The notes under the pieces: model-generated
What the model saw: only the letters and a program-made list of their open reading frames with translations
Databases searched by the model: none
What the model was told of the DNA's origin: nothing
NCBI GenBank assembly: GCA_053919585.1
Contig: CM132788.1
DNA from: Euprymna scolopes
Taxonomy: Eukaryota
Reading direction: 5' to 3' (one strand)
Length of the DNA: 64,000 nucleotides
In this document: positions 976-40,000 of the stretch, one piece after another
Numbering within the stretch: position 1 is the first letter of the stretch
How the letters are laid out: each line of letters begins with the position of its first letter
Position numbers and translations under genes: made by a program

Positions 976-1521
976 CTGAACTTATATTTGGAGATTGCGT
1001 TGAAACGGGAGGTGAGTTTGTGATCAGGAAATTCAACAGATTAGGGAATGCACTGGCTGGAGCATTCCCTTGTGTATGCGTCGTATTTCAATAACTGGGA
1101 AGTAAATATAGCAAAGATGTTGGTGGCTTGAAAGTTTAAGTGATTTCCTCTCGTCTGACAAATTGTTACCAGAAGAAGAGCTGAGCATCTTCGGCAAAAT
1201 AGCATTTTGTTTAGGTGTAATTGATTCATCACAAGGTATATATGACACAATAAAATAAGGATCAAGTTCAGCTGACTCTTTCGTAGACATCTCTGGCAAA
1301 ATTGGATTTGGTTCAAGAGAGATGGACTCTTCCTTTTGCATCTCAAAATAGATAGAATCTGTCCACACTTAAACTGACTCTTCTTTGAGTATTTCTGGCA
1401 AAATAAAAATCGGATTAAGTGTAATTGATTTTTTCCTTTGGCATATCTGGTACATGTGAACGAATTTCTTCCTGGCTCATTTCTGACGAGATTGAATTTG
1501 TCTTCAATATAATTGATTGTT
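976..1521 (-). pseudogene. Degenerate exon encoding an imperfect 17-aa tandem repeat (part of the decayed minus-strand gene)
   Basis: Minus-strand acceptor TTTTTCTAG at ~1522-1530 and donor GTAAG at 971-975. Translation gives units EKSITLNPIFILPEILK / EESV*VWTDSIYFEMQK / EESISLEPNPILPEMST / KESAELDPYFIVSYIPC / DESITPKQNAILPKMLS, with one in-frame TAA and a frameshift near 1430. Confidence 0.6.
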
Positions 1522-2409
1522 CTAGAAAAAATTAAGATTTCAAAAAAATTCTTTGGCGTTTACTGATAAATCTGTATATAGATAAACGTTAATATTTTTA
1601 TTATCTAAGCATAAACTACTCTGGTTTATTTNNNNNNNNNNNNNNNNNNNNNNNNNNNNNNNNNNNNNNNNNNNNNNNNNNNNNNNNNNNNNNNNNNNNN
1701 NNNNNNNNNNNNNNNNNNNNNNNNNNNNNNNNNNNNNNNNNNNNNNNNNNNNNNNNNNNNNNNNNNNNNNNNNNNNNNNNNNTAAATTGTTTACAAACCA
1801 ATAAAGTTGAAGTCCGAATAATATGACCAGTTTTCTATAATCGAACATCCGTATATTATTTTCAGAAAATAAAGTCACCATATATCGGAGTGATAGCGAC
1901 AAGTTGTGTATTTTCATTATACCTTACAATCGTTTCCTGTCTGATCAGATAATTTCGAACATTATGTCGTTTAAAAATATCCTCAATAACGGCCTCTCTT
2001 CTGGCGTTGAAATACACTAATCAATGAATAATTATGACTACACTTTGAGCCCCCCAATTGGAAAACCATGCGGTTGAACCTACCTCACAATTTGCTCTCA
2101 CTATTTTTCGTTTTTATGGAATTTCTATATAACTAACGGTTACAAAACGATTACAACGTATTATGAAAAAGATCTGGGTCATTTCAATATTTTACCGATT
2201 CCAAAACAATTACCGATTATGGTCTAAATTCTAATTCCGGTATAATTACCGATTAGGATTCTGAATTTAAAATTGTTTATTTGTGGAATAGTTCCATTTT
2301 TACATTACAATTATTACTGAGCTATGTTTTGTCCCTGGCTATTTTTACCAAAACATGTATTTCGCTTTAATTACACTGAAGATGTTTTCTTGCTTATAAG
2401 TAGTTAAAC

Positions 2410-34901: not shown

Positions 34902-36622
34902 CAGGAGAAGGAATAGGTTTCCAAAGATTAACTGGAGCAAAAATGACATTCTTTGCCTGATAGTAAAATTTAATAATATTTCCACGTTTCAATGAAAATA
35001 TAAGGTTCACTTGCACTAACAATCAGGTAAAGCAAAATATATTGTCAAAATTTGAGACATAAAACTAGAATTATGCAATTTTCCAGTTCATAGGAATGCA
35101 TTATTATTTTCAACGAAAGTTAGGAGAAAGAGAAATATATTAAAAATCTGCGTAGAGAAAAATTGAAAAGTTTCAGTTTGCAATGAATTGCTCTAAACAA
35201 GTCAATTAAGAGACACATGCGCAAAATTAGGTCGGCCTTTAGAAATGAACCCTTCCGTTTTTTCCAAAAAGGGACAATTGCGTTTTTCAAACTGAAAGTC
35301 TAATTTGCATTAAAGTAGACAGTTTTATATATAACATAGGCTAATTGCTTCTTGTGTTCACAACTCAGAGTTTATAGTATGTTTACTTATTCGTTTTTAT
35401 TAAAAAGTGAAATATAATTTCTAACTATTTACAGTTTATGAATACATGCCGGAGCTTTTTTCAAATACAATTTTTTCCCATCTATCAAAGAAAAACATTA
35501 CCAAAACGTCTGTTTTACTGTTTATGTTCGTAAAATGACAAAAAGATTTTACTTTGAATTTCGTTCAAATTTCTTGCGTTTAAAACCTCGGATTAATTGC
35601 ATTTTTTCTTTTTCCTTTTCTTTTTATTTCAACATACTCTTCAATTAAACTGTTTCGAATAGTCGCTTACAAAATATTTTGTGTAAAGCTGAGTTTTTCT
35701 CGTCGTCAAATTGTTTTGGGGGTTTATTGTGTCAGTATGAAAACCTCGTTTTTAAATGTTGAGGCATTTGTGGTTGAATAAATAACGAGGACGATACAGT
35801 GGCAATTAAATAAATATGCATAAAAAAACGTTAATTCAGCAATTTATTTGCTCACTGCTGGACTGGTCGTGACGACCATACTCTCTGCGTGTCTGTCTAC
35901 ACTTTTTTGGTACACCGGTTCTAGTTCCCTGGAAATTACGCCATCGGCGTACGTCAGGTCATTGAAAAATTCATTACTCCAAGTAATAGGGTATGTGTCG
36001 CAAAGTTAGGAAGTGGAAGAAAGAGAGATTATGTATATACATAAGCACGGCAGGTTGTGTAAGAACGAAAAAAAGAACTAAAAACACAACTAAATTGATG
36101 TTTACAAAATAGTAGGTTAAGAAGAAACATAAGGGGACGAAATGTTATTGCATTCTCAGGCGCAACGGAACACACACACACACACACGCATTGACGAACT
36201 AAAATCAATTCAATTTTCAGTAAGAGAAGGAAATGAAGGAAAGTAACCTATTTACACATACTATGATCCAATATAGTTTCAAAACACAGCAGTCCGACAG
36301 CTACAATCCACTCTAAGAGTGATATGTATGGCATGAACACGCACACATATAAAAATCCACACATATCGCATAAAGAACGCAAGTCGACGGTAGCTGAGCA
36401 GCGACTTGGTTTCCACCAGTTTTGGCAAATAACAAACAGCATCCTGAACAGAAGCCTGTGCTCTATCCCAACTCTAATAAATGGACCGGAGATAATCTCT
36501 TCAGCATCAGACAAAGCCAAACTCTTTGCCAAGAAGTTTGCAGCTTATTCTAACATTTTCGACTAATGCTGCCAACCTCCAACATTTTCTCCTGTATGAG
36601 AAAATGTGATAAAATATATTTA

Positions 36623-36681
36623 TAGTCATCGACATACATTCCTGTTTCGTTGTATCACAACTCATCAGTGGCGCTAGACTA
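36623..36681 (-). ncRNA. Type I hammerhead ribozyme, copy 1
   Basis: TAGTC-TAG-CGCCA-CTGATGA-GTTGT(GAT)ACAAC-GAA-ACA(GGAA)TGT-A-TGTCG-AT-GACTA: full core, stems II and III, and an extended stem I with an internal loop. Predicted GUA cleavage between 36635 and 36634. Confidence 0.88.
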
Positions 36682-36877
36682 GCACCTATCCCAAGCCGAG
36701 GGACTAATCTGTGCGAATGTCTATTTAAATAAACATCCGGCCGCTACTTGTAAAGTGCTCAAACGCTTGTTTGTAAACAAACAGCGAGCTTCGCATTTTT
36801 CAGCCAAATTAAGAAGCGAGTGATATTATTTACGGCAGTGCTCAATCCAAAGAGGGGGGCTTTATAAAATATATTTG

Positions 36878-36936
36878 TAGTCATCGACGTACAGTCGTGT
36901 TTCATTGTATTACAACTCATCAGTGCCGCTAGACTA
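36878..36936 (-). ncRNA. Type I hammerhead ribozyme, copy 2
   Basis: TAGTC-TAG-CGGCA-CTGATGA-GTTGT(AAT)ACAAT-GAA-ACA(CGAC)TGT-A-CGTCG-AT-GACTA. The first stem I pair is mismatched; predicted cleavage after 36890. Confidence 0.82.
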
Positions 36937-36943
36937 GCACCTA

Positions 36944-37012
36944 TCCCAAGCCGAGGATCGGACCTAGAACCATCGTGATGACAGTCGGCAGTTCTACCCC
37001 TCGACCAGGGAA
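36944..37012 (-). promoter_or_regulatory. tRNA(Asp/Glu)-derived Pol III promoter within the retrozyme
   Basis: TTCCCTGGTCGAGGGGTAGAACTGCCGACTGTCATCACGATGGTTCTAGGTCCGATCCTCGGCTTGGGA: A-box-like TGGTCGAGGGG, CTGTCA anticodon loop (GTC) and B-box-like GGTCCGATCC. Confidence 0.65.
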
Positions 37013-40000
37013 GTGGTGCCCGCAACTAACCTGTCCTAATGTCTATTTAAATTAACATCCGTCCGCTACTTGTAAAGTGCTCAAACGCGTGTTTGTAAAC
37101 AAACCGCGAGATTCGCATTCGAGAAAATGTGATACACGTATATCTGTACGTGATGTTGCCAAGCTAATCAAAAACCTTGATTCCAGTAAAGCAACTGGCC
37201 CTGGCGATATTCCAATTATAGTACTCAAAAGATTACAACCTGAACTTGCGCCCATCCCTACAAAACTGTCAAAAGGTTGTCTTAAGGAGAATTGCTTCCC
37301 GTCACCCTGGAAAATCTCATCGGTATGCCCCGTATTTAAGAATTCAGTCGATCGTTCATCCCTCTCTCAGTACAGGCCAATAAGTCTTCTGTGTGCCATG
37401 AGTAAGTTGCTGGAAGTTGTGTTAAATAGAGAAGTAATCAACCATCTTAGCAAAAATTACCTTCTTAGTGACACACAATATGGTTTCCATTCTGCTAGAT
37501 CTACAGCTGATGTGCTTACAGAATTCTCTCATAGGATTAGCAACTCTCTCGACAGATGCTACTTTTCCAGGGCAATTGCTCCTTACATATCAAAGGCCTT
37601 TGATAGAGTATGGCATAAAGGGTTACTTAACAAGATCTCCAACTATGGTATAGCTGAAAGTGTCCTCTCAATTATTAAATCATTTCTCTCTGATAGCTAC
37701 ATAAGAGTAGTGGTTGATGGGCAGAAATCAGAAGCTCTTAGTATTAATGCTGGAGTCCCTCAGGGGTCAATCCTGGGCCCAACTCTCTTCCTGATCTACA
37801 TTAATGATTTCCAAATCACATCCTTACACCATTCGTAGACATTTATGCTGTTGAAACTACTATCTATGGTAGCACATCTAAGGACGAAAACGACCAAGTT
37901 CTCTCTGATTCTCTCTCCTCTAATATTGAACAAGCGGTACAATGGGGAAAGAGGTGGCTTGTTTCATTTAATGCATCTAAACCAAGCTTTTATCTTTACA
38001 TCATCAACGCTCTAATCCCCGTCTGGCATCAATTGAAATGAATTGCTTTCGTCGTGGGGAGACTTCATGTTGTGACAAGATTCATGGCTTGACCCTTACT
38101 CCTGATCTGAAATGAAACACATATATTAAATCTGTTGCCAAGGCCGCTGGAAAAATGGTCGGATCCTTCTATCGATCCAGTAGATATCTAACCGTGGATG
38201 CAATCCTCTATCTATATAAGATCCAGGTGCGTCCAAGGATGGAGTACTGTTGCCACATCTGGACAGGAGCTGCTAGAAAGGACTTATCCTGCCTTGACAG
38301 AGTTCAAAATACACTTCGTAGACTTGTGGGGATGCCCTTTTCTCTTCCTTGCAACCTCTATCTCACAGAAGAGATGTTGTGAGTTTGTCTCTACTTTATC
38401 GTTATTTTCAGGGCAGGTGCTCGGCTGAGCTCCATTCTGTGGTCCTCCCTCGACAAACTTTCACAAGAAACACCCGTCTAGATGAAAATACTATCACTAG
38501 TTTCCCCCACTCTTTATCTGTGCCTAAACCTAAGCGTGCATTCTATGATCAAAGCTTCTTTCTTAGAACGGCACCCCTATGGAATTGTCTTCCGTTTTTC
38601 TGTTTGCCAGCTGACTACAATATAGTTGTCTTCAAGTCTAACGTTAACAAGTTTTTGATGAGTCGTTCCATATAAGTAAACTAATTTAACATATCTCAAT
38701 TACTAACTGTTACTATATTGCCCAATTTCTACTGTACACTCGTTAAACTTTATCCTCAAGTGTCCTCTTGGCCTTGATAAATTATGATGCTTATGTAAAT
38801 AAAAATAAAATAAAATAAAATAAATAATGTAAAAATGTGTTCAATGGTTAAAATGCGATTGCAAGGGCTATGTAATTTGTTGTTGATGTTTGAGGAAGTC
38901 GGCGGGGACTGATTATTGAAGGATCGTCCAATGACTGAAATGATGGGAGCGTTAAATGAACTTTACGCTAGCTTAAATATTATGTCTCCTAGTGACACAG
39001 TACTTTAATTTTAGTAACTGTTTGTTTAAAACGCAAATAACTGAAGTACGGAATATGACAATTTTTAGTTGCCAGTAAATCAAATTGGGCGGGCTTAGCT
39101 GAGAAAGTCTTTATTATTTAAGAACTTAAAATAAGATAACATTAGGTTAGATGTCTGAATATACGAGCCAATTACGGCGGATGTAACCAAGTGTAGAATT
39201 TGTGATAGTGACAACTGATAACAGCGAAAGGACTAAATATTTAGAAAGAAAAATAAGGACGGTTTCCTCTACATGTGTTGTGAGTGTGATGTCATTTGTA
39301 GTATAATGTAATGATGTATCTTTATTTTTACGTTAAAACGCGTATAAAATGAGTGTTGAAAGCTATATCATATAGTGGCTATTAGTTTAGATGTTTTTAA
39401 TTTGTGTGTGGCATCTGTTGCTACAAAGCGAAACAAACAAATGGGGAATTTTTGCGGTTAAATTATTAATACATACATAGATATACTGATCATAATAATA
39501 AACATAATATAAATAAACATGTATACAGTAATATTTAACATAATAAAATAATTTAGTTATGTAGCCACTCTCTCTAGCCTTTCCCATCTCATAAGTAATA
39601 TTGTTATAAATATAGGATTTTTTTTATGATGTTTTAAAATATAGTTTTATATTTTTGTTAACATTTTATATATCTGTTAGTTTTATTATTTAATTATGAG
39701 TAAAAATTAAAATGTATTTTATATCGTAGAGTTTTAAAATTAATTGTAATTTAAAATTTAAAAAGGTTTATAAAAATGTCTATTCCGATATTTGGAATAA
39801 TTAAAGCACTCAGCGAAGTCTTTAGTGTTTTTTTTTTTTTTTGCATGAGGAGACAATCGATAATTTCTCAATGTCATTGACAGTCATAAAACGGCAAATT
39901 TTAACAGCAACGACGTAATAGAAACGGACACATAAACACTCCTATAAAGACCTTGTTTTATTGGCTGTATAGATCCCTCAGCAGTGAGCCCGTAACAAAA

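What the first reader, a model, noticed from the sequence alone, without database searches (positions are those of the whole stretch)
36598..37134. Dimeric hammerhead retrozyme with a tRNA-derived Pol III head, inserted into a CR1 LINE with a perfect 14-bp TSD
Seen: a 509-bp insert bounded by identical gagaaaatgtgata copies interrupts the LINE. On the minus strand it reads part-unit, tRNA(Asp-like) A/B boxes, hammerhead 2, TTTT, spacer, repeat, hammerhead 1. Both hammerheads have the complete CUGAUGA/GAAA core, stem II GUUGU/ACAAY, stem III ACA/UGU, a GUA site and an extended stem I (TAGTC/GACTA beyond an internal loop). The predicted cleavage sites are 255 nt apart. Known: tandem type I hammerheads of 150-400 nt define metazoan non-LTR retrozymes, which form circRNAs, and Schistosoma SM-alpha joins a tRNA-like promoter to a hammerhead. 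Inference: this is a mobile, Pol III-transcribed self-cleaving RNA family, probably undescribed in this taxon. The insert starts mid-unit and ends ~23 nt past a cleavage site, as expected from reverse transcription of a circular or multimeric RNA; the TSD implies target-primed insertion by a borrowed RT.
Basis: partly seen in the sequence, partly recalled or inferred. Interest (0 to 1): 0.92.

Follow-up and report, generated by a model that had tools for sequence, protein, structure and literature searches.

The report
Old hammerhead retrozyme copy in LINE
This is an old, partly decayed copy of a very abundant small non-coding jumping element of a 5.9-Gb mollusc genome; each repeat unit joins a tRNA-derived segment to a self-cutting hammerhead RNA motif, a known kind of element, and this copy shows its insertion footprint unusually clearly.

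Summary
A 509-bp insert (36612-37120, minus strand) lies between two perfect 14-bp repeats. It interrupts a LINE whose 19 fetched paralogues are all uninterrupted at that site. The insert holds 1.6 units of a repeat family with over 5,300 first-look candidates in this genome. The family forms tandem arrays of 321-322-bp units, mostly in (TA)n microsatellites. Arrays have a fixed 3' end just past the hammerhead and variable 5' ends.

Both hammerheads have an intact catalytic core. Both also carry private stem mutations, and the insert is 91-92% identical to a young unit.

Rfam scores the motif below its threshold. Support comes from the three-helix architecture, a second hammerhead family with different helices, and the hammerhead being the least variable part of the unit.

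The "tRNA head" is real as ancestry. It aligns end to end with this genome's tRNA-Glu(CTC) at 74% identity (0 of 1000 shuffles reach the score). tRNA-Asp is second. It no longer folds as a tRNA.

Pol III transcription, self-cleavage and circles remain untested; poly(A) RNA-seq gave no support. "CR1" was not tested.

Verdict: a new member of a known kind (animal non-LTR retrozyme, Sm-alpha-like design). The scan has reported this family repeatedly elsewhere in this genome.

The parts
36598..36611 (.). Target-site duplication, copy at the element's 3' end (GAGAAAATGTGATA on the + strand)
   Evidence: family D3, 100% identical. Paralogous LINE copies carry this sequence once.
37121..37134 (.). 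Target-site duplication, copy at the element's 5' end
36612..37120 (-). The retrozyme insert. It runs from unit position about 92 through one full unit junction to 23 nt past the last cleavage site. It is 1.6 units long, or about 1.8 before a 67-nt internal deletion.
   Evidence: Identity to a young canonical unit is 91.3% and 92.5%.
36944..37012 (-). tRNA-derived head of the upstream unit. The A-box-like TGGTCGAGGGG lies at 36997-37007. The B-box-like GGTCCGATCCT, mutated in this copy, lies at 36954-36964.
   Evidence: the canonical head against this genome's tRNA-Glu(CTC) gives 45 of 61 identical, z 6.6, 0 of 1000 shuffles as good. ARAGORN and Rfam find no tRNA.
36878..36936 (-). The core is intact and the predicted cut is at 36890|36889. 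It has a G10.1:U11.1 wobble and an A2.1/C1.1 mismatch.
   Evidence: 14.5 bits; hammerhead-fold energy -7.1 against -10.6 kcal/mol for a young copy.
36866..36869 (-). TTTT run 21-24 nt after the upstream cleavage site, followed by TATAAAG. It is internal to the copied template.
   Evidence: It is conserved in family copies.
36702..36703 (-). Junction of a private deletion that removed most of the tRNA-derived head from the downstream unit, making it 255 nt instead of 322 nt
   Evidence: Other copies have deletions with different end points.
36623..36681 (-). The core is intact and the predicted cut is at 36635|36634. It has a C2.3/U1.3 mismatch in stem I and a changed stem III loop.
   Evidence: 22.5 bits; -6.6 kcal/mol.
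36612..36634 (-). 3' tail: the 3' strand of stem I plus the A/U-rich end (…AAAUAUAUUU). The element ends inside or just after the T run.
   Evidence: Family arrays end at unit positions about 22-28.
37135..37838 (+). Host LINE to the right of the insertion, with a reverse-transcriptase domain
   Evidence: RVT_1, E 3.8e-19. (over 8,500 first-look candidates, 92% identity to paralogues).
36380..36597 (+). Host LINE to the left of the insertion
   Evidence: in 19 paralogues the left flank aligns directly next to the right flank.

Best explanation
The insert is an old, 5'-truncated copy of a high-copy, non-coding, non-autonomous retroelement of the animal non-LTR retrozyme kind.

Unit layout. The family unit is 321-322 nt. 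Counted from the predicted cleavage site it reads: 3' strand of stem I, an A/U-rich stretch with TTTT, a spacer of about 160 nt, a segment of about 70 nt derived from tRNA-Glu, and a type I hammerhead.

Proposed life cycle:
1. Arrays are transcribed.
2. The hammerheads cut the RNA into units, which may be ligated into circles.
3. A reverse transcriptase and endonuclease borrowed from an autonomous element nicks a TA-rich target. A Penelope-like element is the most likely source.
4. The enzyme primes cDNA on the A/U-rich stretch 13-28 nt past the cleavage site.
5. It copies one to several units before stopping.

This gives arrays with a fixed 3' end and variable 5' ends.

This copy. The target was a LINE, not a microsatellite, so the 12-14-bp duplication is visible. 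The nick fell after GTGATA on the + strand. After insertion the copy lost 67 nt of one head and accumulated roughly 8% substitutions, including some in both hammerheads.

Shown: insertion, target-site duplication, family structure, tRNA ancestry, hammerhead architecture.
Inferred: self-cleavage, circles, the donor enzyme, the polymerase.
For: Insertion:
- The target-site duplication is 14 of 14 identical.
- 19 of 19 paralogous LINE copies are continuous across the site.

Family structure:
- 5,307 first-look candidates in the genome; 93 scored matches at 82-93% identity.
- Arrays hold 1.3 to 6.5 units with a 320-325 bp period.
- All arrays end at unit positions up to 28, while 5' ends range from 11 to 287.
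- About 17 of 24 independent arrays sit in (TA)n.
- There is no ORF (at most 54 stop-free codons) and GC is 45%.

Hammerhead:
- On an alignment with a second family, 94% of cells pair, against 22-51% when partners are slid. Five pairs change on both sides.
- The hammerhead is the least variable part of the unit: 0.018 against 0.039, one-sided p 0.012.

Other:
- tRNA ancestry.
- The circular unit folds more stably than shuffles, z -2.7.
- A Penelope-like element of the same genome ends in (TA)n in both copies fetched; one of them was listed with an open 806-codon frame.

Literature:
- Animal retrozymes are tandem 170-400-nt type I hammerhead repeats with target-site duplications longer than 4 bp, and Penelope-like elements are the suspected helpers (PMC7229834; bioRxiv 10.64898/2026.07.22.740005).
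- Penelope-like elements prefer (TA)n targets (PMC8557442).
Against: - Rfam does not recognise the motif at its gathering score.
- There is no experimental or read-level evidence of cleavage or circles. Poly(A) RNA-seq gave about 300-420 reads per 10-12 million. Both strands were represented, 79% of reads ran on into unlike flanks, and no reads piled up at the cleavage site.
- The one Penelope-like family I could read shares no sequence with the unit and has no canonical hammerhead. The helper is therefore unidentified.
- The covariation rests on only two hammerhead lineages.
Confidence: 0.85

Rival explanations
1. The tRNA-derived head is a working internal Pol III promoter, so each unit transcribes itself and the units downstream, as proposed for Schistosoma Sm-alpha. 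This would be a sub-type of the best explanation, not an alternative to it.
For: - The head is significantly tRNA-like.
- It keeps A-box-like and B-box-like motifs about 33 nt apart in young copies.
- A TTTT run follows the hammerhead.
- The element's 3' end in this non-microsatellite insertion falls in or right after that T run.
- The Sm-alpha precedent is summarised in PMC6765202.
Against: - The A and B boxes are not less variable than the rest of the head (0.081 and 0.040 against 0.031).
- The copied template of this very insert runs through an internal TTTT and starts upstream of the head. A head-to-TTTT Pol III transcript therefore cannot be the template.
- ARAGORN and Rfam see no tRNA.
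- The reads show no defined start (poly(A) libraries, not a fair test).
Confidence: 0.4
2. The units are not an independent element. They are the terminal repeat (pLTR) of an autonomous Penelope-like element, and short arrays such as this one are its extreme 5'-truncated insertions.
For: - Penelope-like elements carry hammerheads near their 3' ends, insert in partial tandems and prefer (TA)n (PMC8557442).
- A second hammerhead family occurs here as inverted head-to-head 3' fragments, a typical Penelope-like footprint.
- An unchecked first-reader note (s1-295599) reports a GIY-YIG remnant followed directly by a tRNA-type head and a hammerhead elsewhere in this genome.
Against: - None of 24 independent arrays continues into a reverse-transcriptase or GIY-YIG ORF of matching orientation.
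- Arrays repeat the whole 321-nt unit up to 6.5 times.
- The Penelope-like 3' UTR I read is unrelated to the unit.
Confidence: 0.12
3. It is satellite DNA spread at the DNA level (unequal crossing-over, or excised circles reinserted), with the hammerhead as a passenger.
For: - The organisation is tandem.
- Units within an array are nearly identical (L013 at 99-100%).
Against: - There are thousands of dispersed short arrays with one common 3' end and variable 5' ends.
- This copy has a clean target-site duplication and an empty site in 19 paralogues.
- The hammerhead is the most conserved part of the unit.
Confidence: 0.04

Closest known systems
Metazoan non-LTR retrozymes (Cervera and de la Pena 2020, PMC7229834; vertebrate survey in bioRxiv 10.64898/2026.07.22.740005)
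   Same: - Tandem units of about 170-400 nt.
- A type I hammerhead in each unit.
- No ORF, LTR, PBS or PPT.
- GC below 50%.
- Target-site duplications longer than 4 bp.
- They co-exist with Penelope-like elements.
- They are known in molluscs (mussel).
   Different: - That paper does not mention a tRNA-derived segment.
- This family has a strong (TA)n target preference and a fixed 3' end just past the cleavage site.
- Expression as circles is not shown here.
Schistosoma Sm-alpha / Sj-alpha SINE-like hammerhead elements (Ferbeyre et al. 1998 and Laha et al. 2000, as summarised in PMC6765202 and PMC2770079)
   Same: - A Pol III-type promoter region placed just 5' of a type I hammerhead.
- Tandem units of about 330 nt, in tens of thousands of copies.
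- After cleavage the promoter sits at the 3' part of the monomer.
   Different: - The host phylum is different and the sequence is unrelated, so it is presumably an independent assembly.
- The tRNA source here is Glu-like.
- Pol III transcription and cleavage were shown or argued for Sm-alpha, not here.
- I could not read the primary paper.
Penelope-like element terminal repeats with hammerheads (PMC8557442; Cervera and de la Pena 2014, cited there)
   Same: - The hammerhead lies near the 3' end.
- A short extension follows it.
- Insertions are tandem or inverted.
- (TA)n is the preferred target.
   Different: - There is no coding body.
- The unit shares no sequence with the Penelope-like family read here.
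- The stems are full length rather than the minimal variants.
Newt satellite 2 and axolotl retrozymes
   Same: - A unit of about 330 nt.
- A short, near-palindromic stem III (here ACAGGACUGU), which could pair between two copies as a double hammerhead.
   Different: - Those are reported as Pol II transcripts (PMC6765202).
- They have no tRNA-derived segment.

Membership tests
Metazoan non-LTR retrozyme | Type I hammerhead with the conserved catalytic core and three helices | tested here: met
   The core CUGAUGA…GAAA is intact in both copies. The helices pair in 94% of cells on a 24-row alignment that includes a second family.
Metazoan non-LTR retrozyme | Tandem repeats with a monomer of about 170-400 nt, from dimers to multimers | tested here: met
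   The period is 320-325 bp and arrays hold 1.3-6.5 units. The window copy holds 1.6 units.
Metazoan non-LTR retrozyme | Non-coding, GC below 50% | tested here: met
   The longest stop-free stretch in a unit trimer is 54 codons, and GC is 45%. LTR, PBS and PPT were not looked for.
Metazoan non-LTR retrozyme | Dispersed insertions with target-site duplications longer than 4 bp | tested here: met
   A 14-bp duplication, an empty site in 19 paralogues, and hits on at least 30 contigs.
Metazoan non-LTR retrozyme | Self-cleavage, and expression as unit-length linear and circular RNA | tested here: inconclusive
   Family reads exist in poly(A) RNA-seq, but they show no ends at the cleavage site. Tandem junctions cannot be told from circle junctions. 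This needs total RNA and bench work.
Sm-alpha-type Pol III hammerhead SINE | tRNA-related internal promoter region 5' of the hammerhead | tested here: met
   74% identity end to end with this genome's tRNA-Glu(CTC), with 0 of 1000 shuffles as good. A-box-like and B-box-like motifs are present in young copies.
Sm-alpha-type Pol III hammerhead SINE | Transcription by RNA polymerase III | not testable with these tools
   The only indirect evidence is that the boxes are not specially conserved and that a TTTT lies inside the copied template.
Rfam hammerhead families (clan CL00010) | Score at or above the family's gathering threshold | tested here: not met
   The best hit is Hammerhead_3 at 22.5 bits against 48.5, and it is a permuted alignment. 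No Hammerhead_1, HH9 or HH10 hit was listed.
tRNA gene or pseudogene | Cloverleaf recognised by a tRNA finder | tested here: not met
   ARAGORN finds none at default settings. It finds one only at the 75% threshold, where about 10% of shuffles also hit. The Rfam tRNA model was not listed at E up to 10 on 106 nt.
CR1-clade LINE (host of the insertion) | Reverse-transcriptase phylogeny or a CR1-type 3' end | not tested
   Only RVT_1 is shown. The Atlas look-up gave generic reverse-transcriptase clusters.

The most novel reading that the evidence does not exclude
A mollusc lineage has independently assembled the blood-fluke design. A tRNA-Glu-derived Pol III promoter sits next to a type I hammerhead, so the element transcribes and cuts itself into circles. 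A Penelope-like enzyme then copies those circles by rolling-circle, target-primed reverse transcription, primed on the A/U tract just past the cut. That would explain the (TA)n preference, the fixed 3' end and the 12-14-bp duplication seen here.
Probability: 0.3. Interest if true: 0.55.

Novelty: new member of a known kind. Interest (0 to 1): 0.35.

Why it matters
The family itself is a known kind of element, and the scan has already flagged it many times in this genome.

This copy adds a clean insertion footprint. Most copies sit in (TA)n, where duplications cannot be read. This one landed in a LINE with many paralogues. It therefore shows:
- a 12-14-bp duplication;
- a nick next to a TA-rich patch;
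- a 3' junction inside the UUUUAUA tract;
- a template that ran through an uncleaved hammerhead and an internal TTTT.

These details constrain models of how animal retrozymes are mobilised. They also argue against a simple head-to-terminator Pol III transcript as the template. The tRNA-Glu ancestry of the head is now tested statistically rather than judged by eye.

Tried and rejected
- Rfam cmscan on the window and on a young copy gave only sub-threshold, permuted Hammerhead_3 hits and no tRNA.
- ARAGORN at default settings found nothing. At relaxed thresholds its hit is not better than shuffles.
- My first tRNA test, local alignment with +2/-2 scoring, was underpowered: 15 of 300 shuffles scored as well. 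I replaced it with an end-to-end test.
- The RF00005 genome search returned only one tRNA-Thr/Lys cluster. I therefore found Asp and Glu genes by pattern search.
- Single-sequence MFE folding does not recover the hammerhead fold; z scores were -0.95 and +0.55.
- Poly(A) RNA-seq on one unit showed no start or end piles and no usable circle evidence. Library strandedness is unknown, so the 2-3-fold strand bias is uninterpreted.
- The helper search stalled. The 3' UTR of the dominant GIY-YIG Penelope-like family has no canonical hammerhead and no similarity to the unit beyond a 21-nt stretch at E 0.04.
- The Atlas look-up did not resolve the LINE clade.
- The Sm-alpha primary paper is not held.
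- No complex or structure prediction was relevant.
Full report
**The observation.**
- On the minus strand, window 36612-37120 is a 509-bp block bounded by two perfect copies of GAGAAAATGTGATA (36598-36611 and 37121-37134).
- Inside it are two repeat pairs, each 92% alike: 95 nt at a spacing of 322 and 93 nt at a spacing of 255.
- Each 93-nt repeat holds CUGAUGA, a GUUGU/ACAAY hairpin, GAAA, an ACA…UGU hairpin and GUA. It also holds a stem I made of a 5-bp helix, an internal loop and UAGUC/GACUA.
- The predicted cleavage sites are 36635|36634 and 36890|36889, 255 nt apart. 23 nt follow the last one.

**It is a real insertion.**
- The right flank has over 8,500 first-look candidates in the genome.
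- In all 19 paralogues fetched, the left and right flanks are contiguous and the 509 bp are absent.
- The paralogues read CAGAAAACACACTATGTGATA at the site. This LINE copy had therefore already lost 7 bp before the element arrived, because both duplicated copies share that state.
- The flank encodes a reverse-transcriptase domain. Whether the LINE is CR1 was not tested.

**The family.**
- The insert has 5,307 first-look candidates in the 5.9-Gb genome. 93 matches were scored, at 82-93% identity.
- Copies form tandem arrays with a 320-325 bp period, of 1.3 to 6.5 units.
- I number units from the cleavage site. Every array ends at unit position 28 or earlier. 5' ends fall anywhere from position 11 to 287.
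- About 17 of 24 independent arrays lie in (TA)n. There the last few TA letters cannot be assigned to element or target.
- In this non-microsatellite copy the element ends at positions 22-24, inside or right after the TTTT run.
- The unit is 45% GC with no reading frame over 54 codons.
- As a circle it folds at -91.9 kcal/mol, z -2.7 against shuffles.
- These are the defining traits of animal non-LTR retrozymes (PMC7229834).

**This copy.**
- It starts at unit position about 92 and runs through one hammerhead and one TTTT into a second unit.
- It is 91.3% and 92.5% identical to a young unit.
- Its second unit lacks 67 nt of the head. Other copies have deletions in the head with different end points and short microhomologies. 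The 255-nt spacing is therefore private to this copy, not a unit size of the family.
- Those other copies were selected by their likeness to the query, so I draw no hot-spot conclusion from them.
- Compared with the common state of the family, the upstream hammerhead has C11.1 changed to U and U1.1 changed to C.
- The downstream hammerhead has G2.3 changed to C and a changed stem III loop.
- The nearest-neighbour energy of the hammerhead fold drops from -10.6 to -7.1 and -6.6 kcal/mol.
- Its B box reads GGTCCGA.
- It is an old, probably inactive copy.

**Is the hammerhead real?**
- Rfam gives only Hammerhead_3 at 22.5 and 14.5 bits, against a gathering score of 48.5. The alignment is circularly permuted and leaves no stem I. 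Formal Rfam membership fails.
- In its favour, all core letters are intact and the type I helices are regular.
- My descriptor found no hit in about 350 kb outside tandem hammerhead repeats.
- It did find a second family in L022, with stem I CCACU/AGUGG, stem II GUCG/CGAC and a GUC site. On a joint alignment 94% of cells pair, against 22-51% for slid partners. Five pairs change on both sides. This rests on only two lineages.
- Across 36 units from 24 loci, the hammerhead is about half as variable as the spacer and head (0.018 against 0.039, p 0.012). That is expected if source copies need it.
- Stem III is short and near-palindromic, so a double-hammerhead mode as in amphibian retrozymes (PMC7229834) is possible. 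This is inference.

**The tRNA head.**
- ARAGORN and Rfam see no tRNA.
- I took tRNA genes from the genome itself and required each tRNA to align end to end with the head.
- tRNA-Glu(CTC), positions about 9-72, gives 45 of 61 identical. The score is 21 against 0.5 ± 3.1 for 1000 dinucleotide shuffles, none of which exceeds 13.
- tRNA-Asp(GTC) gives z 4.5 and tRNA-Gln z 3.2. Cys, Thr, Lys and Ser give about 1-2.
- The head therefore descends from a tRNA, most like Glu among the nine tested, but has lost the cloverleaf.
- Whether it still acts as a Pol III promoter is open. The A-like and B-like boxes are no less variable than their surroundings.
- The template of this very insert began upstream of the head and ran through an internal TTTT. 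A head-to-terminator Pol III transcript was therefore not what was copied.

**RNA.**
- Poly(A) libraries of the same species hold family reads at about 35 per million. Both strands are represented, four fifths of reads run into unlike flanks, and no reads pile up at the cleavage site.
- The "goes back 321" joints are just tandem junctions.
- This neither supports nor refutes circles, because these are the wrong libraries for small non-polyadenylated RNA.

**Who moves it?**
- GIY-YIG matches are abundant (15,395 candidates), and many lie in long open frames of about 806 codons.
- Two copies I read end in (TA)n, as the retrozyme does. Penelope-like elements are known to prefer (TA)n and to leave inverted, 5'-truncated pairs (PMC8557442).
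- The second hammerhead family shows exactly that footprint.
- The Penelope-like family I read shares no sequence with the unit and has only a hammerhead look-alike with C3 replaced. The helper is therefore inferred, not identified.
- Further fetching was blocked.

**Comparison and verdict.**
- The element meets the tested sequence features of an animal non-LTR retrozyme.
- It shares the promoter-plus-hammerhead layout of Schistosoma Sm-alpha (PMC6765202, PMC2770079).
- I found no paper describing it in cephalopods or molluscs beyond the mussel retrozymes.
- Earlier notes of this scan report the same family many times in this genome. The family is therefore not a new find of this window.
- It is a new member of a known kind. 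The particular value of this copy is its legible insertion footprint.

Noticed in passing
L022:2680-3000: A second hammerhead family (stem I CCACU/AGUGG, stem II GUCG/CGAC, GUC site, tail AUAAUUAUAUUUUAA). It occurs as two inverted head-to-head pairs of roughly 75-nt 3' fragments inside a (TA)n tract, a Penelope-like insertion footprint. A decayed copy also lies at about L008:2555-2600.
   Followed up: partly
L087 (reverse strand 1-960) and L088:1-700: A Penelope-like element with a C-terminal GIY-YIG domain; the L087 copy was listed with an open 806-codon frame. Both copies end in (TA)n. The 3' UTR carries poly(A) runs and a hammerhead look-alike (UUGAAGA, GCCCG…CGGGC hairpin, GAAAC) with C3 replaced. 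A more distant GIY-YIG remnant at L012:2423-2701 (minus strand) has a similar AUGAAGA…UCCC/GGGA…CGAAA.
   Followed up: partly
G000:C11:1.68-2.16 Mb; C19:127.555-127.581 Mb; C28:83.24-83.39 Mb: Very large tandem tRNA gene arrays. The C11 cluster is tRNA-Thr with a few tRNA-Lys: 627 ARAGORN calls over overlapping loci, 109 distinct sequences. tRNA-Asp(GTC) gives 731 pattern matches, about 335 bp apart on C19. tRNA-Glu gives 841 pattern matches, about 264 bp apart on C28, many with point changes.
   Followed up: no
window 36598-36611 against paralogues L032-L050 at about position 1488-1508: This LINE copy lacks 7 bp (CACACTA) that all 19 paralogues have at the target site. Both duplicated copies share the deletion, so it predates the retrozyme insertion.
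   Followed up: yes
L002, L003, L006, L007, L022 and window 36702/36703: Independent internal deletions within the tRNA-derived head, each with different end points and 2-4 nt of microhomology. They may reflect template skipping over a structured region. However, the copies were chosen by their likeness to the query, so a hot spot is not shown.
   Followed up: partly
L009:1743-1810 in runs X22-X24: The poly(A) RNA-seq reads over the spacer are strongly strand-biased (for example 28-35 against 0-3 in X24). Without knowing the library type, I cannot tell whether the RNA is sense or antisense to the ribozyme.
   Followed up: no
L020:463-1306 (+) and 1338-2276 (-): Two arrays of the family lie tail to tail, about 30 bp apart in one (TA)n tract. 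One has a 325-bp unit about 90% identical to the 322-bp form. Repeated hits on the same microsatellite are likely.
   Followed up: no
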